DNA of 64,000 nt from Rhodosorus marinus CCMP1338 (lineage: Eukaryota > Plantae > Rhodophyta). The notes under the pieces are model-generated. The model did not search any database. It was not told where the DNA came from and worked only from the letters and a program-made list of their open reading frames with translations. Below are positions 1-11,228 of this stretch, piece by piece; position 1 is the stretch's first letter, and every line of letters begins with the position of its first letter. Location of the stretch: positions 682,001-746,000 of the forward strand of contig JAMWBK010000010.1 in NCBI GenBank assembly GCA_029953675.1. Reading direction: 5' to 3'. The position numbers were made by a program, and so were the translations under genes.

Positions 1-266
1 TCCCGTCGGAAAAAAGGAGCAAGGACAAGCATTGGTCTAGATATTGTGGCCAAGCTGATCATATTGATTTCCAAGGGTTTTGGTTTTTAAGGTGTTTGGC
101 CTTGAAAAAGGGGGTCTTGTTTTGAAGTCAACGAGCGTTTGGGTTTTTGGGCGGGTTGGGATGAGGGGGGGGGGGGGAGAAGAGAGGAGGAGAAAGAAGG
201 TGGGATTGAAGAAGGGTAAGGAGTGTTACTCTGAGTGTTTGTGTGTGTGAGGCAGTGAGGGAAGAT

Positions 267-270
<4 letters not shown>

Positions 271-317
<47 letters not shown>
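271..317. repeat. (AG)n microsatellite
   Basis: Uninterrupted AG dinucleotide run in the G/T-rich upstream region of the first gene. Confidence 0.95.
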
Positions 318-610: not shown

Positions 611-2577
611 ATGTACAGACGACCAGTGTATCTGTTTCTAGAAGGGCTGAAGAATGTGCTGTCCGGAGCCGAGCAGAGAGTCTCGCGGCTGGTGGACGCG
701 TTGGAAAGCCAGTCCGCTGATGTAAGCGCGATATCAGCGGGTTCCAGCAACGGGATCAGGGCAAATGCAGAGACTGCGACTTCTCAGGCTACAGGCGCCT
801 ATGCTTCGATCCAAATGCAGGCACAGACTGCGGTTCTTTCTAGTACTGTCCAAGAACCTCCCCCTGGACTGATTTCTACCCCGGTAAGGCCAGGCAGAAG
901 CTGCTTTGTCTGCAACTGATTAGAGAAACTGAGCTCCATCTGGAACTTCGCTTGTGGGTCTTACCAGGCAATCGTTGGGACCAACACCCAGTCTGGATGC
1001 CATCCAGGACTGCCGAACAATTCTAAGGATCGGATGACAATTCCAATCAACCATAGCTTGGAGGCCACCATCGCTCGGAAAGCTTCGGGCGATGAGACAA
1101 TGAAACTTGGGCGCCAGGAAGCACCGGCGGAGCGGCTGAGGGCGTGAGTACTTGGTTCTTCGTGAGGATGATGATCCCGCCCCTCCAATCCAATGCTAAT
1201 AGAGTTATACTCTATTGCAGGCCCAAGCAAGTTCGTCCCAAGGAGTGGTACGTGATAGACGCCATGAACCTGATCTTCCGTTTCTACCACGCCAGAAACC
1301 TCCATTATAGAGCGAGGCCTTCTTCCTTGAATGAGACGTCGTTGGCAATGTTGTCCATGTTAATTCGTCGATTGATAAGGTTGGTGGACGACCATGCGAA
1401 AGATGGGAATCCCCTCGTCATGGTGTTTGATGCGAGACATCTTGCCACAAAGAGTGGGCAGCGTCTCGCAATCTTGCCAACGTACAAGAAAGGAAGGTAC
1501 TCGCTTTTGTTCAAGATCAAGCTCACTTTTTCTACTCTGTACACGTAGAATTTTCAAAGAACACCAAATCACCCAAAACCGGATAGGGTTTACGCTGATT
1601 AGTTCTTTTTGCGTGCTTTGTACAGACCACCAATGCCAGAGGATCTCAAGCAAATAGTTCCTGAACTCAAAGCCGCGGCGTTTGCGCTGGGCGCGAATCT
1701 GTTAGAGGTGGGCTCTACACGAACGAGGATGGACGTCGATTTGCCCTCTAACTCGTTTCTCTCTCTATTCAGCTCGGTGGCTTCGAGGCTGACGACGTGA
1801 TCGGTAGCCTGGCCACTCAAGTTCGCGACCGTGGGGAGAAGATGTATATTGTTTCCAATGATAAGGATTTTCAACAGCTTCTTGAAGATGATAAGATTTT
1901 CCTGCTTAAACCAGTCTTTAACTCAAAGGAAAAACGCTGGTCGACCATGACGGCAGAAGATTTCCGTGAATCTAACCATGGATTGGAGCCTTGCAAGTAC
2001 GTGCTCGCTGTCGTGCGCTCGCAGAGTAGCCAGAGATTCAAGCGAGAAACCTCAAACCCCTGAAAGACCGTCCTTTGTTTTCGCTGCAGATACCCTGACA
2101 TTCAGGCCCTCACAGGGGACGCTGCTGACAACGTTCCAGGCGTGAAGGGCATAGGTCAGAGAATCGCACCCTTCCTGCTCTCGAAGGCTGCTAACAAGGA
2201 TCTCGAATCCTTGCTCGCTCACGTTGATATTTTAGACGAGAAGTACAAACGGGAGTACGTCCAACACGAAAGAATCGGAAACAAGAGGGGGGTCGAGGGG
2301 GGGATTGGGACTGATTCAAAAGCTTTTGGTCTTCATGACTAGGTTGAAACCTAAGGCTGAAATCTTGCCTCAAATGAGGACTGTTCTCACGATTAGGAGA
2401 GACATTAATCTGGGGATGGCCCTCTGGCTGGCACTAAGGTATCGCCGGAAAATTAATATTAAGGAGGTGGACCGAATATTTGGCAGACTTGGGGGAGATA
2501 GCTCTTCAGTCCGGGAGCAGCTGTCCAGTATTGGTTTCAAGGAAGCAACTTATCAGAAAGTCAAGATGAAGTACTAA
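611..2577 (+). CDS. 5'-3' exonuclease (DNA Pol I 5'-nuclease/FEN-like, probably organellar), multi-exon; start uncertain
   Basis: Spliced exons give WYVIDAMNLIFRFYHA...VMVFDA...PTYKKGR, PPMPEDL, GFEADDVIGSLA, IVSNDKDFQQLL and ALTGDAADNVPGVKGIG (H3TH motif). GT-AG introns restore the frame, e.g. 1144-1220. Confidence 0.9.
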
Positions 2578-2797: not shown

Positions 2798-5700
2798 CTA
2801 CATATTTACGTGAACGCGAGTACCGGCTTCCATCATCGTTCGTCTCACGTCAAGGAGAGACATATCATCGTTCTTGAAGAGGAAGGCCTGCATCAAGAAC
2901 GTACGACTACTCTCAGGAAGTACGGTTAAGTCTGCCAGTCGTATATACCTCGAAGGGCCCTGTGGAACTCCGACCATATCGCACACGTAGGTCCAGGTAT
3001 CACGAAAGTCGGCAATAACAAAACCCTCCTTTCGAGAAATATCTTCCTTCTCCTTGTAAAAACTATAAACATCTTCCGGTGAAAGGCATCCATCCATGTC
3101 TGTATCCAACACCGGGAAAAAATATTCTACACTCGCTCGCGCACCAGGTTCGCCCACAGCAATCCAGAACCTGATCCGGACAAAACCAGTTAGCTAAGGT
3201 GCAAATATTGCGCCGGTCGAATTAATAAGGACATACGGATCTAGAACGTACCTGGTCAAGTCGGCAACTCCAATCCTATCCTGACCATCGCAGTATCTAT
3301 TGAAAACCGATGCGACGGCGCTTGGTATGAGCAGCTCCTTATGCGTGTTGACTAGCTTCATACATTCTCGAGAAGCACCGACTCCCAGCGTCGGATCTTT
3401 CATTGCAACGGTTGAGAGCAAACCCAAGAGCGCCTGCGTTTGCCGTAGCAGATCATGCAAGTTTAGAGAGTCAGCTCCGCAGTAGGTGGGTCGAACGCAA
3501 AGTTCTGGTAATAGAGCACAAACCTCAACTCTGTCCGCTCTCAGGACCAACGCCACGCCTTCATACCGACCATTCTCGGCGTCGAAAAGAGCTTTGCTGA
3601 GGTTTCCTCTACGAAGCTCTCGCATAGTGAAAGGTCTGCCACTCCGAGAGCTCCCACACAAGGCGAAACACAGGCACGCCGAAGCGACTTGCATCGCAAA
3701 CTCAAGCGCAAGACGCTCATGGAACATTGATGCTCGCTCTTCCAGAAAGGCGGATACTAGTTTCTCTATCCCACCGACCCGTACTCCCTTTTCGTCGTCC
3801 ACCCTCAGCACGTTGTACAGTCTCTCCTCGGGATCAAAGCCTCCGAGCCTATGGTTCAGAATGAGATAAACATTTAGATCGGAAGGCCAACGCGAACCCC
3901 TTCGGACCTGCAGGCCACGCTTATCCAGAGTTCTTCAGCTGAAAGCTTCACCGATTAAAATGCCCGCTTACCTGGCGCTCCAATACCTTGAAAACGATTC
4001 ATAGTCGATCACTTCCGGCGAACTCGCACCATGGTTGATCTTGTCTCGCTTGACGGCCTCGTAAAGGATACCAGCAGCACAAACAGGAAGGTAACAAACA
4101 CGGGCTATATGCCTGAAAATTTCCTCCGTTACCCGCGAGTCGTTTTTGCGAAAAATGTTCTCCACAGTGAGTTCCTCCACTCGGCTTTGCGACAGCGTCA
4201 AGTCTAGGGCTTTCCTTTGCTCCTGAAGAAGACAAGATCACCGCAACCGTCTACGATCAATGATTTGCTCAATTTGAAAAAAGCCCGAAGAAAGCAAGAA
4301 TCGAAGCTATTGCTGGCTTCGAACACATTGGCAGATTCACGTGTCACGGCAAGGAATTCGGAGGCCGATGATCCATACCTCGTTGAAGCTGAGGATGACT
4401 TCGCTCTCCGCCCCGGCAGTGGCCGGTAGTGAGGTGCAGACCATGAAGTCATCATCGATGACCTTTCTGGTAAGGTCGCGAACTTCCAACGCGTCCTGGG
4501 CAGTGAGTCTATCCTCAAATACCCGCTCGGCCGGGAAAGAATAGACACTCGATATGTCTTTGCTGCTGCCGACGAGAACGAATGGCGTCGTGGGTACATG
4601 CGCGCGAATTTCCTCCAAGTGCGGACGTAGGAACGGAAGCTTCACGATGAAGACATCGAACATTTTTAGAGCCGACACCGTCGAAACGCTCTTCTCAAAA
4701 ACAGAAACGGTGAAGCCGCCGTATTTCTCCATGATGCTTGTCATCTCCTGAGAGGAATTCTTCTGAAACCCTGTCCGGATCAGGGTGAAATAGACGATCA
4801 CACAAAAGTCAGCAACAACGTGGAGGCCTCTGCTGTCCAAGCTCGACTATGGCGATTTGCGAGTTTTCCGACGTACCTATTAGAAGAGCGTGAAGCTTGA
4901 TATTTGCATTGCTCTGTGACCTCCTCTGCATACGCTCTTCCGTCTGCCACTTAATAATTGAGGCGTGTCTCTGTAAACCCATGGGTAGGCAATCCTTCTG
5001 GGCGACATCCGCGACCAATGGAACTCCAATATCGACAGAGCAGGAGATCAAATCAAGGCAAGAAACAAGGGGAGTCACCACTATGGGTCCCGTAAGTCTG
5101 TTTCTCTTCAGGCTTAAGGATCTCAATTGCGGAATGTGCCCCAACGGTGTCAAGTCTATTGACCCTTCCAAGCGATTATCCTCGAGGTACAGTGAGCGAA
5201 GGTTGGTGCATGTCTTCAACGGTCCAAGGTCAATCTCTATCAGCTCGTTGCTCTGAAGCCAGACTTTTTCCAGCTTTCGGCAGTCTGCGAGCGGCGCCAG
5301 GTCAATGCGACATAGTCGATTTCGCTGTAAGTACAAGGTCTGCAGTCAAAAACGGAGGCGATAGATTAGCCAGTGCAAAGACGAGTGTACGGAATGTGGA
5401 CTCTTCCGCAGATCATTGACAAAAAGTCATACCTCGAGATCTTGGCAATGAGAGAGCGCTGAGAGATCGATTTTCTCTATTCTGTTAGCTGCGAGGGAAA
5501 CCTCTTTCAACCGACACGTCGAGAGCTGCCAAAGAGCATCCAAATGCACGCTCTTGACTGCGAGGCCCCCGAGAAAGAGACCCTTCGTATCACCCCTCAC
5601 TACATAGCTTGAGACGCCGGCATCTGCGATCCCATGCACTTTCACCCCAATATCGTCTCTAACTGTCTGGCCCAGATCCTTCATCGAATCCCCTCTGGGA

Positions 5701-6419
5701 AGGTTTTTCCTCCCGGAGGCGGAAGTCCCACTCTGGGGAGATCGACTCTCCATACCATGATCCAACAACTCCTCAGTATCCACAGACTTTACTTCGCACG
5801 ATGAGTTATCATCTGCTGTTGTAGAGGACAATTCCACGTCCTCGCTCGAAATGATTTCCCTTTCTGGATACGGAGCCTGGGGGTGTACCAACTCCACGTC
5901 ATCAACGCTGCTCTGTTCGGGTTCCGGTAAGTTTTCGAGTTTCGGGCTGCTGTTCCCCCAGGGCCGTCCTTCACTAGTTTCTTGAGCAAGGCCCGCGTAG
6001 CTTTTATCAATCTTCCCACCGTTTGGTTCAATTACGGAAGCCTGGGACGCGATGAGCTCCACATCCAATCCTTCTTTCCTACCAGAGTCAGCTACATGGA
6101 CGAGAGCTCGAGCTTCCCAAGGCTGTCGCTCTTTTCCTTGGCCCAACTCCGCATAATCGCCCTCAACCCCCTCTTTGACAGGTTCGTCCACAGGTTCCGA
6201 TACTTCCTGATGCCACGGCCGCTCCTTTGTGTCTCCGTCCGTATCCTTTCCGAGGTCGACGGGTCTACAGTTAGCTGCGTAAGGCCCTGGCCTACCCAGA
6301 GTTGACATCAGGTTGCACTCGCTCATTTCAGATAGGGTACTTAATGAATACCCCAAGTTCTCCCACCCTCGTCTCCACGTTGGCCGCTTTCGCAACTTCT
6401 CCATAGTGCTCTTCACCAT
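2798..6419 (-). CDS. Multidomain protein: acidic N-terminus + LRRs + pseudo-receiver (CheY-like) domain + PP2A B''-like EF-hand region
   Basis: Exons 6419-5433, 5339-4877, 4770-4379, 4222-3972 and 3848 onward join in frame via GT-AG introns. LRRs: IDLxPL..C..L..L.L..N.L. B'' motifs: WSARLGGFDPEERLYNVL and SVEYFFPVLDTDMDGCLSPEDVYSFY. Confidence 0.8.
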
Positions 6420-7190
6420 CTCAAGTCCACAATCCCCGACCCCTCGCCTTCACAAGCAACAAGACTCCAGCGACAACCTGCCTTCCTGTTCCCCCAAATT
6501 TATCAACTCATTACTTCAGTCAGAAGGGACTAACAATCAACTGTTGTACTTGTCAATCGAGCCCATCTCGTCCTTATCTTTCAACCGCCTTCCATAACCT
6601 GAACAACCTCCGGCTGCCCTTGGTTCCTCCTCAAATACTAACAATGTTCAGTTCTCAAACGCCTGTTGACGAAGGGAAACCAACCAAAACTCCCGACTTC
6701 AAAAAAAATCCCTGCGAAAACCCTCCGAGCAAACACTCAACCTTGTCACAGAAGAACAAACAAAAAAAACAAACGCCAAGCTCATCCCACTCCCGACCCT
6801 AGAAACATAAACATACCTCTGAGAAGAAAAAGCTCCCAACCTTGTAGCGTTCTGCTAAATCTTTCAAGGAACAAACCAACCATCAAAATCAGTCTCAGCG
6901 ACTTCTTCACCACCCACCACCAAAACCAAAAAAAAAGAAGCAACAACCACACAAACCAAACCTCCCTCAACAATTTTCACCGATACCACGACCAAAGCAA
7001 AAAGAAAGCTGGAGACAGTTCCAACCCCTTACAGACACCACCCTCTTTCCCCTCCCCCCGCTCCCCCCTCTATTTTCTTATGACCAACTCATCTCCTTCT
7101 CTACCCGCTCCACCATGTAAAACAAAACCTCCCTAACGCATTTTATTCCCAACAAGACGAAAGTAACCTCGAAAAAGGCCATATCAACGT

Positions 7191-8340
7191 TTTCCCGAAG
7201 AAGCTGCTTGCCATCCACTTGCTTTGCACGGCAATCAATCCCACTGCGCGTGTTCTCGTCCTCATCTACTGCAACCTCGTTTTCATTGCGACCGAGGGGT
7301 TGTTTTTTCGGTCGAGCCCTTGACTTCGACTGCTAGATTTGTTTCCCGAAGAAGCTGCTTGCCATCCAGTTGCTTTGCACTGCAATCAATCCCACTGCGT
7401 GTTCTCGTCCTCATCTACTGCAACCTCTTTTTCATCTGCGACCGAGGGGATGTTTTTTCGGTCGAGCCCTCGACTTCGACTGCTAGATTTGTGGCGATAG
7501 TGTCTATTGAAGAGTTGCTTTGCGTGGCTTGGCTGCGCAACTTGCAGTTTGTTGATGGAACGCATCCCCGAAGAAGTTGCTCCCGCAACTTCTTCATTAC
7601 TGAACCTCTTTTTCATTGCTACTGAGTGGTTGTTACGTCGAGGCCTAGCCTTCGACTTCTAGACTCGTGGCGATGGTCTCTATTGAAGAGTTGCTTTGCG
7701 AAGCTTGGCTACGCAAATTGGAGTTTGTGGATACACGTTTCCCCAACGCAGCAGCAGCTACCATCCAGTTGTTTCGCCCGCCATCTTTTGTTGCGTGTTC
7801 CGGTTTTTCATCGATACTGAGGGGTTGTTCGGTCGAGCCCTCGCCTTCGACTGCTAGACTCGTGGCGATGGTCTATTGAACAGTTGCTTTGCGAGGCTTG
7901 GCTTCACAACTTGGAGTTTGTTGATAAACGTATCCCCGAAGCAGCCGTTACTGCCATCCTGTTGCCTGTTCTCCTCGCCTTCAGAACCACTTTTTCATTG
8001 AACTGAGCGTTTGTGAACGGGGGGGAGCTTGTAGAGGGCTATGGCCGAGGGTGCCTTGATTGCAAGGTTATTGGCGATGATCGCTTCTGCGTTTTCCCAA
8101 CAGTAGCAGCAATTACTATCCAGTTGCTTTGCACCGCATCCTGTTGAGTGCTCTGCTCATAAGCTGAACGTCTTCCCTTTAGCGCTACTGTGCGTTTGTC
8201 AAAAGAGGAGCCTAGAGGGCTATTATCGTCGAGGGTGCCTTGACTGCTAGGTTGGTGGAAATGGTACATTGACCAGTTTTGCAAGCCTTGGTTGTGCAAC
8301 TTCGAGTTTGTTGACGGAGCGTAGAGGGCTATAGTCACCC
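7191..8340 (+). repeat. Diverged tandem array, units about 150-190 bp (first two units near-identical, period 151)
   Basis: Recurrent ggtcgagccc..cttcgactgctag and ctattgaagagttgctttgcg..gcttggct..aacttggagtttgttgat blocks at about 7310, 7470, 7640, 7830 and 8230. Confidence 0.85.
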
Positions 8341-8863: not shown

Positions 8864-11228
8864 TCAAAAATCTGTGGTCCGTGGACGACCTTGCTCTTGA
8901 TATATACACACTTCCTCTCGCGAATCATAAGACTCAAGCGCACGCCGCTGTTTGGCGTTGAGCCGCGTATTCCATCCAATACCCAGAATGTATTGCCCAG
9001 AGTTATGATGTATCCCTTTCTTCGCCACCTCGGGACAGATCTTTTCAGCGGCTTCGCCACTTGGAAAAAGCCCCGACTCGAGTATGTAAACAGTATCGTC
9101 AGCGTTGTGACACCTAGGACAAGATGATGTTAACCATATCAGCAGAGTTGCTAACGATCCAGAAAGTGATCCGACCACAAGAAACACCGTACCCATTTCC
9201 GGGTTCGTTTTCTTCGCCAAAGCCTTTGCAGAAGATCTCGTAGAAGCAACTCTTCTCCGGCCTCTCGTTCTTCAATGCGCACTGGACAACGTCCTCAATG
9301 GCTTTTATCATCTTGTTGCTCGCTCGAGCACGGTAGAACTCGACATTCAACCTTCCGCTGTCAACTGATGACTTCTTCGGCTTGGATTCTGACAGAATGA
9401 CCAAGTCAGAGTCATGCCCGCTGATTTTCGCTCTGGGATCCTTCAGCCAAAGAATTCCAGGCTCACTCCATACAACGTCAAAACCCTTGCGCAGGACCTT
9501 CAGAACGACCCTGCTCTTCATCTTTGTAAGAAGTTTGAAGGCCTGAACGCTGATATGACCTAGATTAGGTAGCTCATCACGAAGATCAGCGATCAACGAG
9601 TCCTCGTAATATACAGGGATGCTCCGAACAGCGGCCCATTCATAGAGGTCTTTGTCCAGCGCAGCGATGATGAAGTTCGATACTTGCTGCTCTCTCAATC
9701 GACAGACCCAATGCATCATGGTCTCTCGCTCAGCGTAGTGAGCAGCAGTAAGAACAATAGAGTTGTTCACAGCGAGAAGGGTCAGCAATGGATCAATCTG
9801 AAACGGTAACCTAAGAGTTCGGTCAGACCGAAGTTCTCCGTCCTCACGTTCTCGAAAAATGCTCCCCTCCAGGATCTCGGTTCTAATTCTTCCACAGGTA
9901 AGCAGCCTTGATCCGTCTACAGGCACGGGGTCAGTTTCGCTGGATACGAAGCTGACACTGGATTCGCAGTTACAGATTCCAGGGCGCATCCTCCTCTGAA
10001 GGCAAAGACCAGACTCCTCAAGACAAGACGACAGTTTCCAGGGAGCGGACAATGCTGTCCCCCGCTGAATGGCATATGTACCACGGGCATGAGCCAAGTG
10101 CGTGTTTAGACTCCGTGCAACATTGGCTACATCCTCGTCGGATTTCGTCTTCGCTGAACTGTTCGAGTCCTGCTTTCTATCATTCACATCGTAGCTGTCT
10201 GAAATATGAACTGACAACGAGCTTTCAGATGCATCGATCACTTCGCGTCTACCAGCCGCAATCGTCTCGTGCAAGAACCAGTTGTCATGTAATCCTTCGC
10301 GGAAAACAAAATGCGGCATCCGTCCATCGAAAAGCCGTGGTCCGCCAGTATTCCAGGCGAACACAGAAATATTCTCATGAGAACGGAGCTTCCCTAGTTC
10401 TCTCACATCTCTCAGTATCTGAAACGATATCAATCCACAAATTTCTGAGTGCCGTAAGAATTCCACGCTCACGTCCTGATTCCTCAGAGAATTGTCTCCC
10501 GAGAGAATTTCCCTGTGGCTATTCGCACCGAATCACCAAAGCCTGGGTCGTCCGTATCAAGAGCTGGGAGCTCATCCAGGTCAACGCCCGCGCTGACCAC
10601 CAAGAAATGCTTGAACTGAGCTGCTATCTTCTTCAATGTTCTCGGGAAGTTACTCGTGAGGATTGAATCCCCATCGACTAGAACCGATACGGTTGCTGTA
10701 GATTCATTTGCTCGAACTATCATAGAGTTGAAAAGGAGCCCTTTGAGGAAGGATTTGTCAACTCTGGTCTCGATGCTCAGATTAAACCTGGAAGCTGCTT
10801 CCATGTACCTGACCAAACGGCCAAGACAACGTTTGGTCAGGTGTGAGTTCGCAGGTCTATTATCTCTTAGGCACGGATTCCGCTGCTCACCCGGTTTCGT
10901 AGCCCAGCAGCGTTACCTTGGGACGTGGTTCCAATTGTACCCATGATCGGATCGCTCTGTAATTTCTCACGGTGTCCTCTCCACGGAAGGGTTTTGGTGC
11001 AGAAAATATTTCCATGGAAAAGTCTTCCAGTCTCCCCGAGAAGGGACGCCTAGCCGGACTCGAGTTGGAAGCATGCCCAGAGTATGCTTGGCCACGCCTG
11101 GAGCTGAGCTGATAGAGGTGAATCAGCACGAGAGTTCCCGTTAGCAGAACTAGCCAATACGGAGGCCGCTTGGCTCTGTTCCAGCGTTGCTTCAATCTGT
11201 GCAATAGAGATGCACGTTCTCCAATCAT
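8864..11228 (-). CDS. RAY1: Beta-arabinofuranosyltransferase RAY1-like, GT77 nucleotide-diphospho-sugar transferase (type II membrane protein)
   Basis: N-terminal TM (PYWLVLLTGTLVLIHLY), IFSAPKPF..AIRSW..L.P.P.VTLLG, FAWNTGG..MPHFVF..G.HDNW, FIIAALDKDLY and ILESGLFPSG..IHHN. Three introns restore the frame. Confidence 0.75.

What the first reader, a model, noticed from the sequence alone, without database searches (positions are those of the whole stretch)
2798..6419. One gene linking LRRs, a pseudo-receiver domain and a PP2A B'' regulatory subunit
Seen: ORFs the track lists separately join through canonical introns with matching phases (DLE|TLYLQRN, LLIG|FQKN, FNE|EQRK, SAR|LGGFD, LTR|FWIAV). 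The middle exon 4379-4770 (LHALLIGFQK..MTSIMEKYGGFTVSVFE..MFDVFIVKLP..LEEIRAHVPTTPFVLVGS) has the beta-alpha pattern of a CheY-like receiver, with Lys at the usual phospho-Asp position. Known: B''/PR72 subunits are Ca2+-binding substrate adaptors of PP2A and normally lack LRR or receiver domains. Inference: a sensor-adaptor in which ligand or protein binding by LRRs directs PP2A, i.e. an undescribed phosphatase-signalling module. The acidic N-terminus also carries short repeats (RPW/QPW x3, DVEL x3).
Basis: partly seen in the sequence, partly recalled or inferred. Interest (0 to 1): 0.7.

Follow-up and report, generated by a model that had tools for sequence, protein, structure and literature searches.

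The report
Red-algal LRR, pseudo-receiver, PP2A-B'' protein
One red-alga gene (Rhodosorus marinus) encodes a cytosolic protein that joins leucine-rich repeats, a dead two-component receiver domain and a divergent PP2A B''-type regulatory core; this architecture is conserved across red algae, was not described in the papers I could search, and may be a lineage-specific way of targeting the PP2A phosphatase.

Summary
Window 2798-6419 (minus strand) is one gene. Its seven-exon model translates exactly to GenBank NDN08_003932 of Rhodosorus marinus (990 aa, "hypothetical protein").

A related-strain transcript splices introns 1-3 at the predicted sites and runs on into exon 5. A second transcript ORF confirms introns 5 and 6. 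So this is one mRNA.

All three domain calls pass profile and fold tests:
- **LRR:** 5 repeats, Pfam LRR_8 E 1e-13.
- **Middle domain:** a CheY-like receiver (family profile hits RpfC REC at 1.5e-6; AF2 pLDDT 93; Foldseek DctD REC, TM 0.71). It is a pseudo-receiver: Lys527 at the phospho-Asp site, no acidic pair, no Lys109 equivalent.
- **C-terminus:** homologous to the whole PR70/PR72 B'' core (profile E 9e-21; Foldseek 4i5l E 9e-13, TM 0.72). EF2 is intact and EF1 is degenerate.

About 28 proteins share the architecture, and every named one is a red alga. Binding to the PP2A core is inferred, not shown. I found no paper describing the family. Verdict: a new variant of a known kind, of moderate interest.

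The parts
2798..6419 (-). Complete CDS of one gene (ATG 6419, TAG 2800-2798). Seven exons: 6419-5433, 5339-4877, 4770-4379, 4222-3972, 3848-3524, 3433-3252, 3170-2798. 990 aa, identical to R. marinus NDN08_003932.
   Evidence: translation equals P0001; name and source.
5340..5432 (-). Intron 1 (93 nt, GTATGA..CAG), phase 0, inside LRR 2.
   Evidence: Spliced out in transcript L001.
4771..4876 (-). Intron 2 (106 nt, GTACGT..CAG), phase 1, inside strand beta-1 of the receiver-like domain.
   Evidence: Spliced out in L001.
4223..4378 (-). Intron 3 (156 nt, GTATGG..CAG), phase 0, in the linker between the receiver-like domain and the B'' core.
   Evidence: Spliced out in L001.
3849..3971 (-). Intron 4 (123 nt, GTAAGC..TAG), phase 2. 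Retained in the one transcript contig that covers it.
   Evidence: Splicing is supported by the P0001 model and by family alignment continuity.
3434..3523 (-). Intron 6 by position along the gene (90 nt, GTTTGT..CAG), in frame and without stops.
   Evidence: Absent from transcript ORF P0101 and from P0001. Coordinates. Its removal restores the length seen in homologues.
3171..3251 (-).
   Evidence: Spliced out in P0101 (DLTRFWIAV is continuous).
5661..6419 (-). aa 1-253: acidic, Ser/Gly/Pro-rich N-terminal region predicted disordered. Carries the degenerate [RQ]PW...DVEL repeats. Copy number varies between strains.
   Evidence: pLDDT below 50 over residues 1-253. Composition and motif positions. 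A 138-nt x3 tandem repeat in L001 where the window has one copy. Lower nucleotide identity than the rest of the gene (81% against 89-92%).
4944..5660 (-). aa 254-461: small beta N-cap, then five 24-25-residue LRRs (cores at aa 304, 328, 352, 376, 401), then a C-cap. Includes intron 1.
   Evidence: Pfam LRR_8 1.2e-13 and LRR_4 1e-12, both above gathering score. PDB Roco LRR 1e-21. pLDDT 89-98. Repeat cores.
4439..4904 (-). aa 475-594: pseudo-receiver (CheY-like (beta-alpha)5) domain. Includes intron 2.
   Evidence: Family profile A1 against PDB receivers, RpfC 1.5e-6. Pfam Response_reg in 5 of 29 members, best 1.3e-5. AF2 pLDDT 93, pTM 0.87. Foldseek DctD REC 3e-5, TM 0.71-0.78.
4640..4642 (-). 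Codon of Lys527, the residue at the phospho-acceptor Asp position (end of beta-3, FIVKL).
   Evidence: Alignment to the RpfC receiver. Column counts. Coordinates.
4196..4438 (-). aa 595-623: flexible linker containing a short hydrophobic motif (VILSF). It lies where canonical B'' proteins have their N-terminal hydrophobic motif (seen as Y/W-F/Y-P).
   Evidence: pLDDT below 50 over residues 593-623. Motif comparison is inconclusive.
2816..4195 (-). aa 624-985: B''/PR72-like core (all-helical, two EF-hand-derived lobes). Includes introns 4, 6 and 5.
   Evidence: Family profile A2 against PR70 4mew 9.1e-21 over chain residues 21-333 of 356, and PR72 4i5j 4.8e-19. Foldseek 4i5l_E 9.2e-13, TMt 0.72, and 4mew TMt 0.74. 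Canonical B'' proteins hit the query at 1.7e-6 to 8.4e-4 in a library of 1.8 billion proteins.
3071..3106 (-). EF-hand 2 loop, DTDMDGCLSPED (aa 889-900). Ca2+-ligand positions 1, 3, 5, 9 and 12 are intact.
   Evidence: Columns equivalent to PR70 D401, D403 and E412 are invariant (Asp) in the family; the D405 column is Asp or Asn. Asp at loop position 12 also occurs in canonical B''. PR70 D403 both binds Ca2+ and contacts the A subunit (PMC3698643).
2978..2980 (-). Codon of Asp931, equivalent to PR70 Asp443 in the helix that binds the catalytic subunit.
   Evidence: Invariant in the red-algal family and in canonical B''. The role of D443 is described in PMC3698643.

Best explanation
Window 2798-6419 (minus strand) is a single seven-exon nuclear gene of the red alga Rhodosorus marinus (NDN08_003932). 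It encodes a 990-aa cytosolic protein with five parts:
- a disordered acidic N-terminus of about 250 aa;
- five leucine-rich repeats;
- a degenerate receiver domain that cannot be phosphorylated;
- a flexible linker;
- a divergent but full-length PP2A B''/PR72-type core with one intact EF-hand (EF2).

It belongs to a family with this architecture that is conserved across red-algal classes.

Most likely mechanism (inferred): the C-terminal core docks on the PP2A scaffold/catalytic dimer as canonical B'' subunits do. In PR70, Ca2+-loaded EF2 and the helix around Asp443 (here Asp931) form part of that interface. The LRR and pseudo-receiver modules would act as protein-protein interaction surfaces that bring substrates or regulators to the phosphatase, or that hold the subunit at a location.

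The domain architecture and the single transcript are shown. Holoenzyme formation and the role of the LRR and pseudo-receiver modules are inferred. The confidence of 0.58 applies to the PP2A-subunit function; I put the architecture itself at about 0.97.
For: Gene model:
- One open frame through GT..AG introns.
- Exact identity to P0001 after removing the sixth intron.
- Transcript L001 splices introns 1-3 and continues into exon 5.
- Transcript ORF P0101 confirms introns 5 and 6.

Domains:
- LRR_8 at 1.2e-13.
- Receiver profile hits, 1.5e-6 to RpfC REC with many other receivers.
- AF2 pLDDT 93 with an E-H-E-H-E-H-E-H-E-H layout.
- Foldseek top hits are receivers, TM 0.7-0.78.
- B'' profile hit 9.1e-21 covering PR70 chain residues 21-333 of 356.
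- Foldseek of the full-length model ranks PR70 in the PP2A holoenzyme first, E 9.2e-13, TMt 0.72.

Interface features kept:
- The EF2 loop is intact: the D401, D403 and E412 columns are invariant, and the D405 column is Asp or Asn.
- The R288 equivalent is R or K in 12 of 13 members (Glu in one).
- F434 is Phe in 11 of 13 members, and D443 is invariant.
- These are also among the best-conserved positions in canonical B'' from diverse eukaryotes.
- Their roles are taken from PMC3698643.

Conservation:
- About 28 proteins have LRR, mid domain and C-terminal domain in the same order.
- Named members come from Porphyra, Porphyridium (two species), Erythrolobus, Purpureofilum, Galdieria and Cyanidium, plus a second Rhodosorus paralogue.
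Against: - No experiment or complex model links this protein to the PP2A A/C core.
- Pfam's B''-specific models (EF-hand_13, P2R3B_EF-hand) do not match the window protein. Only EF-hand_7 appears, at E 0.02 and below threshold.
- The EF1 Ca2+ loop is replaced by a non-acidic, variable loop.
- PR70 residues R398 (R398D disrupts assembly), W277, R362 and Q440 are not conserved in the family. R398, W277 and R362 also vary among canonical B''; Q440 does not.
- The canonical N-terminal hydrophobic motif is not clearly present.
- I could not determine whether red algae also have a canonical B''.
Confidence: 0.58

Rival explanations
1. The C-terminal domain descends from B'' but no longer binds PP2A. 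On this reading the protein is a Ca2+-regulated scaffold or adaptor for some other partner, built from LRR, pseudo-receiver and an EF-hand core.
For: EF1 is degenerate. R398, W277, R362 and Q440 equivalents are not conserved. Pfam B'' signature models are not matched. The branch is long and identity to PR70 is low, at 15-18%.
Against: Homology covers the whole B'' core rather than one EF-hand. The positions that are invariant in canonical B'' (EF2 ligands and D443) are also invariant here, and F434 is nearly so. Such selective conservation across all red-algal classes is what a retained interface would predict.
Confidence: 0.3
2. The middle domain is a working phosphorelay receiver, and phosphorylation of it switches the B'' domain.
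For: The receiver fold and sequence profile are present. The Cyanidium caldarium member and P0035 keep Asp at the acceptor column, and four members have Glu.
Against: The window protein has Lys527 at the acceptor site. In 29 of 29 family members the two Mg2+-binding acidic residues after beta-1 are G/N/S/A plus F/M/Y/H. The Lys109 equivalent is never Lys and is Glu or Asp in 21 of 29. By established receiver chemistry these residues are needed for phosphotransfer.
Confidence: 0.02
3. The single reading frame is a gene-model artefact that fuses two neighbouring genes (an LRR-REC gene and an EF-hand gene).
For: L001 retains intron 4, so no single spliced transcript covering all seven exons was seen.
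Against: L001 runs uninterrupted from the 5' UTR through the LRR and REC exons and exon 4 into exon 5. The same domain order occurs in about 28 proteins, including transcriptome-derived MMETSP sequences from other red algae. Frame and phase are compatible at every junction.
Confidence: 0.02
4. The protein is a receptor-like sensor whose LRRs bind an extracellular or small-molecule ligand.
For: LRR domains of plant receptor kinases are among the sequence hits.
Against: There is no signal peptide or membrane-spanning segment. The only hydrophobic windows lie inside confidently folded domains. The best LRR matches are Roco, internalin and SDS22-type protein-binding LRRs. Only five repeats are present.
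Confidence: 0.05

Closest known systems
PP2A B''/PR72 regulatory subunits (human PPP2R3A/PR72-PR130 and PPP2R3B/PR70; by recollection, plant TON2/FASS)
   Same: The C-terminal 360 aa align with the whole structured B'' core (profile E 9e-21, Foldseek TM 0.72-0.74). The EF2 Ca2+ loop, the R288 equivalent and Asp443 of the catalytic-subunit-binding helix are kept.
   Different: The EF1 loop is lost, and several A-subunit contact residues are changed. Pfam EF-hand_13 and P2R3B_EF-hand are not matched. The N-terminal extension carries LRRs and a pseudo-receiver, which the canonical B'' proteins scanned here lack.
Two-component receiver (CheY-like REC) domains, and degenerate eukaryotic versions such as plant pseudo-response regulators (the latter from my own knowledge)
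   Same: The (beta-alpha)5 fold and sequence-profile similarity to RpfC, NtrC, DctD, RcsC and CheY receivers. A GA..F..P motif at beta-5 is present in most family members.
   Different: Lys replaces the phospho-Asp. The acidic pair and the conserved Lys are absent in every family member. The domain is fused to LRRs and to a phosphatase regulatory core rather than to a DNA-binding or CCT output.
LRR regulatory subunits of PPP-family phosphatases (SDS22/PPP1R7 and SHOC2 for PP1)
   Same: A short intracellular LRR solenoid associated with a Ser/Thr phosphatase regulator. SDS22 and SHOC2-PP1c appear among the structural matches to the LRR part (ranks 15, 28, 39, 50).
   Different: Those proteins bind PP1 directly through the LRR. 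Here the LRR is attached to a PP2A-type B'' core, and its partner is unknown. The similarity is at generic LRR level only.
Roco/LRRK LRR domains (Chlorobium tepidum Roco)
   Same: These are the best sequence and structure matches for the LRR segment.
   Different: No Roc GTPase, COR or kinase domain is present. The resemblance is confined to the repeats.

Membership tests
PP2A B''/PR72 (PPP2R3) family | Homology and fold across the whole B'' core, not just one EF-hand | tested here: met
   Profile A2 against 4mew_A at 9.1e-21 over chain residues 21-333 of 356; the next non-B'' hit is 4.5e-8. Foldseek 4i5l/4i5n/4mew rank 1-5, TMt 0.71-0.74.
PP2A B''/PR72 (PPP2R3) family | Match to Pfam B'' signature domains (EF-hand_13 PF17958, P2R3B_EF-hand PF21161) above gathering score | tested here: not met
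   Only EF-hand_7 at E 0.02 (15.6 bits against a cut-off of 30) for the window protein. Canonical B'' proteins from the same search do match.
PP2A B''/PR72 (PPP2R3) family | Functional EF2 Ca2+ loop, which contacts the A subunit | tested here: met
   DTDMDGCLSPED. The D401, D403 and E412 columns are invariant Asp, the D405 column is Asp or Asn, and the S409 column is Ser, Thr or Asn. Asp at position 12 is also found in canonical B''. This is sequence evidence only; Ca2+ binding was not measured.
PP2A B''/PR72 (PPP2R3) family | Functional EF1 Ca2+ loop | tested here: not met
   The D-x-D-x-D loop of PR70 (ELDTDHD...) aligns with a non-acidic loop of variable length in all family members.
PP2A B''/PR72 (PPP2R3) family | Catalytic-subunit-binding helix (PR70 439-446, key residue Asp443) | tested here: inconclusive
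   The D443 equivalent (Asp931) is invariant and F434 is nearly so. Q440, which is invariant in canonical B'', is Y/G/S/N/H/W here, and C439 and K446 also differ.
PP2A B''/PR72 (PPP2R3) family | N-terminal hydrophobic motif (PR70 Ile125/Phe128) and AB-2 residues R288, R398, W277 and R362 | tested here: inconclusive
   R288 is kept as R/K in 12 of 13 members. R398, W277 and R362 are not kept, but they also vary in canonical B''. A hydrophobic I-x-x-F/L or I-D-F motif lies in the linker, but its pattern is not uniform.
PP2A B''/PR72 (PPP2R3) family | Physical assembly with the PP2A A and C subunits | not testable with these tools
   No complex prediction or experiment is available here.
Response-regulator receiver (CheY-like) domain | (beta-alpha)5 flavodoxin-like fold with receiver-type profile similarity | tested here: met
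   AF2 pLDDT 93, pTM 0.87, five strand-helix units. Foldseek top hits are receivers, E 3e-5, TM up to 0.78. Family profile hits RpfC REC at 1.5e-6. The window sequence alone does not reach Pfam Response_reg.
Response-regulator receiver (CheY-like) domain | Phospho-acceptor Asp at the end of beta-3 | tested here: not met
   Lys527 in the window protein. Across the family: Asp in 2 of 29, Glu in 4 of 29, other residues in 23 of 29.
Response-regulator receiver (CheY-like) domain | Acidic Mg2+-binding pair after beta-1 and conserved Lys at beta-5 | tested here: not met
   0 of 29 have acidic residues at the pair (G/N/S/A plus F/M/Y/H). 0 of 29 have Lys at the K109 column, and 21 have Glu or Asp.
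Leucine-rich repeat proteins | Tandem LxxLxLxxNxL repeats recognised by curated models | tested here: met
   LRR_8 at 51 bits and LRR_4 at 48.3 bits, both above the cut-off of 27. Five cores at a 24-25-residue period. pLDDT 89-98.

The most novel reading that the evidence does not exclude
Red algae evolved a lineage-wide family of PP2A B''-type regulatory subunits in which substrate or partner choice is made by an LRR solenoid plus a receiver-derived domain. The receiver would descend from a genuine two-component receiver: the Cyanidium caldarium member and one unnamed member (P0035) still have Asp at the acceptor site, and four others, including Galdieria phlegrea, have Glu. On this reading an ancestral red alga coupled His-Asp phosphorelay input directly to PP2A, and in later lineages the receiver became a constitutive interaction or dimerisation module. 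These proteins could then be the main or only B''-class subunits of red algae, which have a reduced gene inventory.
Probability: 0.2. Interest if true: 0.7.

Novelty: new variant of a known kind. Interest (0 to 1): 0.5.

Why it matters
PP2A specificity comes from its regulatory subunits. B''-class subunits are known as Ca2+-dependent adaptors whose extra regions differ between lineages. A B'' core fused to LRRs and a receiver-derived domain, conserved from the early-diverging thermoacidophilic class (Cyanidium, Galdieria) to the seaweed Porphyra, would be a distinct way of targeting PP2A in a major algal phylum.

It would also be an uncommon case of a bacterial-type receiver domain being re-used in a eukaryotic Ser/Thr phosphatase pathway. 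The databases currently label these proteins "hypothetical", "Calmodulin", "Internalin-A" or "EF-hand/Response regulatory domain-containing", so the finding also corrects their annotation.

The idea is directly testable in a red alga that can be transformed. To my knowledge Porphyridium purpureum can be; its member is KAA8497315.1.

Tried and rejected
Rejected in favour of seven exons after P0101 and P0001 showed that the 90-nt segment 3523-3434 is spliced out.
- **Single-sequence searches of the window protein.** These gave only weak evidence: Pfam found nothing for the middle domain and only EF-hand_7 at E 0.02 for the C-terminus, and PDB gave PR72 at 7.6e-4 over 80 residues. Family profiles were needed.
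- **The search for homologous proteins.** It returned only the close Rhodosorus sequences. With profile A2 it returned one protein, probably because EF-hand words swamp the word index. It did not recover the family, so the taxonomic spread rests on the representative search plus cluster look-ups.
- **Literature searches.** Searches for the accessions and for red algae/PP2A/LRR/receiver or TON2/FASS in red algae found nothing relevant.
- **P0051.** This Pyropia protein (620 aa) showed no LRR match to the window protein. I examined it as a possible canonical red-algal B'', but it has no PDB hit on its own and no Pfam domains. Whether red algae have a canonical B'' remains open.
- **Tandem-repeat search of the window's N-terminal coding region.** It found nothing there. 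The RPW/DVEL motifs are only degenerate duplicates.
- **Membrane or secreted topology.** Considered and rejected.
Full report
**1. Gene structure**

Joining them at the quoted junctions uses five GT..AG introns of 81-156 nt. This gives one frame of 1020 codons from ATG 6419 to TAG 2798.

A protein search returned P0001, "hypothetical protein NDN08_003932 [Rhodosorus marinus]" (990 aa; UniRef calls it "Calmodulin"). It also returned P0002, an 814-aa product of a 2863-nt JGI contig.

Those 30 residues correspond to a sixth intron at window 3523-3434: 90 nt, in frame, stop-free, GT..AG. The MMETSP transcript ORF P0101 (72% identical) lacks exactly those residues and also shows intron 5 removed. 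With the sixth intron removed the window translates to P0001 residue for residue. The window is therefore R. marinus nuclear DNA, and the gene has seven exons: 6419-5433, 5339-4877, 4770-4379, 4222-3972, 3848-3524, 3433-3252 and 3170-2798.

**2. One transcript**

Contig L001, which encodes P0002, comes from a related strain and is 81-92% identical in nucleotides. It aligns to the window from 6739 (5' UTR) to 3818. Introns 1, 2 and 3 are absent at exactly the predicted boundaries. Intron 4 is retained, and the contig ends inside exon 5.

This is a cDNA-type molecule that links the N-terminus, LRRs, middle domain and the start of the C-terminal domain. Junction 4 has no spliced-transcript support. 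It rests on the GenBank model and on uninterrupted alignment with homologues.

**3. Domains**

- **LRR.** Pfam LRR_8 (1.2e-13) and LRR_4 (1e-12) pass their curated cut-offs at aa 300-412. There are five repeat cores at aa 304, 328, 352, 376 and 401. The best solved relatives are the LRRs of Chlorobium Roco, internalins and plant receptor kinases.
- **Middle and C-terminal parts, sequence alone.** Alone, the middle part gave nothing in Pfam. The C-terminal part gave only EF-hand_7 at E 0.02, and an 80-residue match to PR72/PR70 at about 1e-3.
- **Finding relatives.** I searched aa 467-1020 of the six-exon model against 1.84 billion representative proteins and got 76 hits. About 28 of them, 800-1330 aa long, match the window protein in the same order: LRR, middle domain, C-terminal domain. 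The weaker hits of about 550-990 aa that I scanned (P0064, P0068, P0072, P0073, P0077) carry the Pfam B'' signature domains EF-hand_13, P2R3B_EF-hand and EF-hand_7. They match the query in two collinear stretches. One of them is named PP2A B'' subunit delta-like, from the sponge Sycon.

**4. The middle domain is a receiver fold without phosphorylation chemistry**

- A 29-sequence alignment of the middle domain (A1) searched as a profile against PDB sequences hits almost only receiver domains: RpfC 1.5e-6, a Clostridium receiver 2.8e-4, NtrC 3.3e-4, RcsC, CheY, FixJ and DctD.
- Five members hit Pfam Response_reg (best 1.3e-5). Six hit OKR_DC_1_N, the N-terminal domain of Orn/Lys/Arg decarboxylases, which to my knowledge also has a receiver-like (CheY-like) fold. 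UniRef already names the Cyanidium member "Response regulatory domain-containing protein".
- AlphaFold2 on A1 gives pLDDT 93 and pTM 0.87 with five strand-helix units.
- Foldseek ranks DctD, HupR, QseB, PhoB and other receivers first, E from 3e-5 and TM 0.68-0.78. Flavodoxins score lower, at about TM 0.45.
- Across the family that column is Asp in 2, Glu in 4 and something else in 23 of 29. The acidic pair after beta-1 is never acidic. The Lys109 column is never Lys and is usually Glu or Asp.
- The whole family therefore has pseudo-receivers. Asp or Glu survives at the acceptor column in six members: Asp in Cyanidium caldarium and P0035, Glu in Galdieria phlegrea, P0038, P0049 and P0050.
- The domain begins at about aa 475, in exon 2. 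Intron 2 splits strand beta-1.

**5. The C-terminal domain is a divergent, full-length B'' core**

- A 14-sequence profile (A2) hits PR70 (4mew_A) at 9.1e-21 over chain residues 21-333 of 356. It hits PR70 in the holoenzyme (4i5l_B) at 1.6e-20 and PR72 (4i5j_A) at 4.8e-19. The best non-B'' protein is an Entamoeba Ca2+-binding protein at 4.5e-8.
- A full-length AlphaFold2 model (alignment A3) has these regions: pLDDT below 50 for residues 1-253; high confidence for the LRR (about 255-461), the receiver (475-594) and the helical C-terminal domain (624-985); and a disordered linker at 593-623.
- Foldseek of that model ranks PR70 chains of 4i5l, 4i5n and 4mew first (E 9e-13 to 1e-11, target-normalised TM 0.71-0.74, about 365 aligned columns). 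LRR proteins follow.

I mapped the contacts described for the PR70 holoenzyme (PMC3698643) onto the family and onto nine canonical B'' proteins:

| PR70 feature | Red-algal family (13 sequences compared) | Canonical B'' (9 proteins) |
|---|---|---|
| EF2 ligands D401, D403 | invariant Asp | conserved (D403: Ser in one) |
| EF2 ligand D405 | Asp or Asn | conserved (Ser in one) |
| EF2 loop position 12 | Asp | Glu, or Asp in 3 of 9 |
| D443 (C-subunit helix) | invariant (Asp931) | invariant |
| F434 | Phe in 11 of 13 | conserved |
| R288 | R or K in 12 of 13 (Glu in one) | mostly R/K |
| R398, W277, R362 | not kept | also variable |
| Q440 | not kept | invariant |

EF1 has lost its acidic loop. 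A hydrophobic motif lies in the linker, but its pattern is not uniform.

**6. Distribution**

Every family member that carries a name is a red alga:
- Porphyra umbilicalis OSX77411.1;
- Porphyridium purpureum KAA8497315.1 ("Internalin-A");
- two P. aerugineum paralogues;
- Erythrolobus madagascarensis;
- Purpureofilum apyrenoidigerum;
- Galdieria phlegrea;
- Cyanidium caldarium KAK4537839.1;
- a second R. marinus gene, NDN08_007557.

A distance tree groups the members broadly by red-algal class. The window protein sits on its own long branch. Many members come from unnamed assemblies, so presence outside Rhodophyta is not excluded. A Pyropia protein (P0051) matches only the B''-like part of the window protein and shows no LRR match.

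**7. Other features**

- The N-terminal 253 residues are acidic (48 D+E against 29 K+R) and rich in S/T/P/G. They contain the RPW/QPW and DVEL motifs at the stated positions.
- These motifs belong to degenerate duplicates. In the related strain one 46-aa unit is present as three near-identical tandem copies (138 nt x3, 96% matches) where the window has one.
- This region also diverges fastest between strains.
- There is no signal peptide or credible membrane segment, so the protein is most likely cytosolic.

**8. Interpretation**

Shown: one gene and one transcript, and the LRR, pseudo-receiver and B''-like architecture, conserved in red algae.

Inferred: the B'' core still docks on the PP2A A/C dimer through the Ca2+-loaded EF2 face and the Asp931 helix. 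The LRR and pseudo-receiver would recruit partners or substrates. I put this at roughly 0.6.

The main rival, at about 0.3, is a B''-derived Ca2+-binding scaffold that has lost PP2A binding. An active phosphorelay receiver, a fusion artefact and an extracellular sensor are each unlikely.

**9. Novelty**

The gene is annotated only as hypothetical. Its relatives carry misleading automatic names. I found no paper on these accessions or on this architecture in the searchable library, though that library is incomplete. I rate the finding as a new variant of a known kind (B''-class PP2A regulatory subunits), of moderate interest.

Noticed in passing
window 3849-3971 (intron 4); L001 2701-2863: The only transcript contig covering intron 4 retains it. 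Read through, it adds YVGIGIVLSFS and a stop after WSAR, which would give an LRR-REC protein lacking nearly all of the B'' core. This could be an unspliced precursor or a regulated isoform.
   Followed up: partly
L001 727-1140, against window about 5892-6029: In a related Rhodosorus strain the N-terminal acidic region carries a 138-nt unit in three tandem copies (96% matches). The window has a single copy, so repeat number varies between strains in the disordered region.
   Followed up: partly
window 1144-2577, + strand: A split (intron-containing) gene convergent with the studied gene. ORF pieces 1144-1548 and 1797-2063 match the 5'-3' exonuclease N-terminal domain (PF02739, E about 5e-7 to 9e-7, below gathering score). 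Its last ORF ends at 2577, about 220 nt from the studied gene's stop.
   Followed up: partly
window 9114-10472, - strand: A 452-aa ORF with a nucleotide-diphospho-sugar transferase domain (PF03407, E 6.7e-15).
   Followed up: partly
window 6420-7100: On the + strand as given, the 5' UTR and upstream region of the gene is a long C/A-rich, low-complexity tract (GC skew -0.27 for 6001-8000). The related-strain transcript aligns up to 6739, so the 5' UTR is at least about 320 nt.
   Followed up: partly
window 7200-7650: ORF translations on both strands show a repeated segment of about 150 nt (for example ...LQSIPLRVLVLIYCNL.F...RG.VFSVEP.TSTARF... occurs twice). Tandem Repeats Finder did not report it at default score.
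   Followed up: no
window 263-317: (AG)n microsatellite, 27.5 copies.
   Followed up: no
P0091 / P0009 (R. marinus NDN08_007557, not in this window): R. marinus has a second paralogue. P0009, the 511-aa member of its cluster, matches the REC and B'' parts of the window protein. The 800-aa P0091 groups with the Purpureofilum protein in the distance tree. Porphyridium aerugineum also has two. The family is therefore multi-copy within species.
   Followed up: partly
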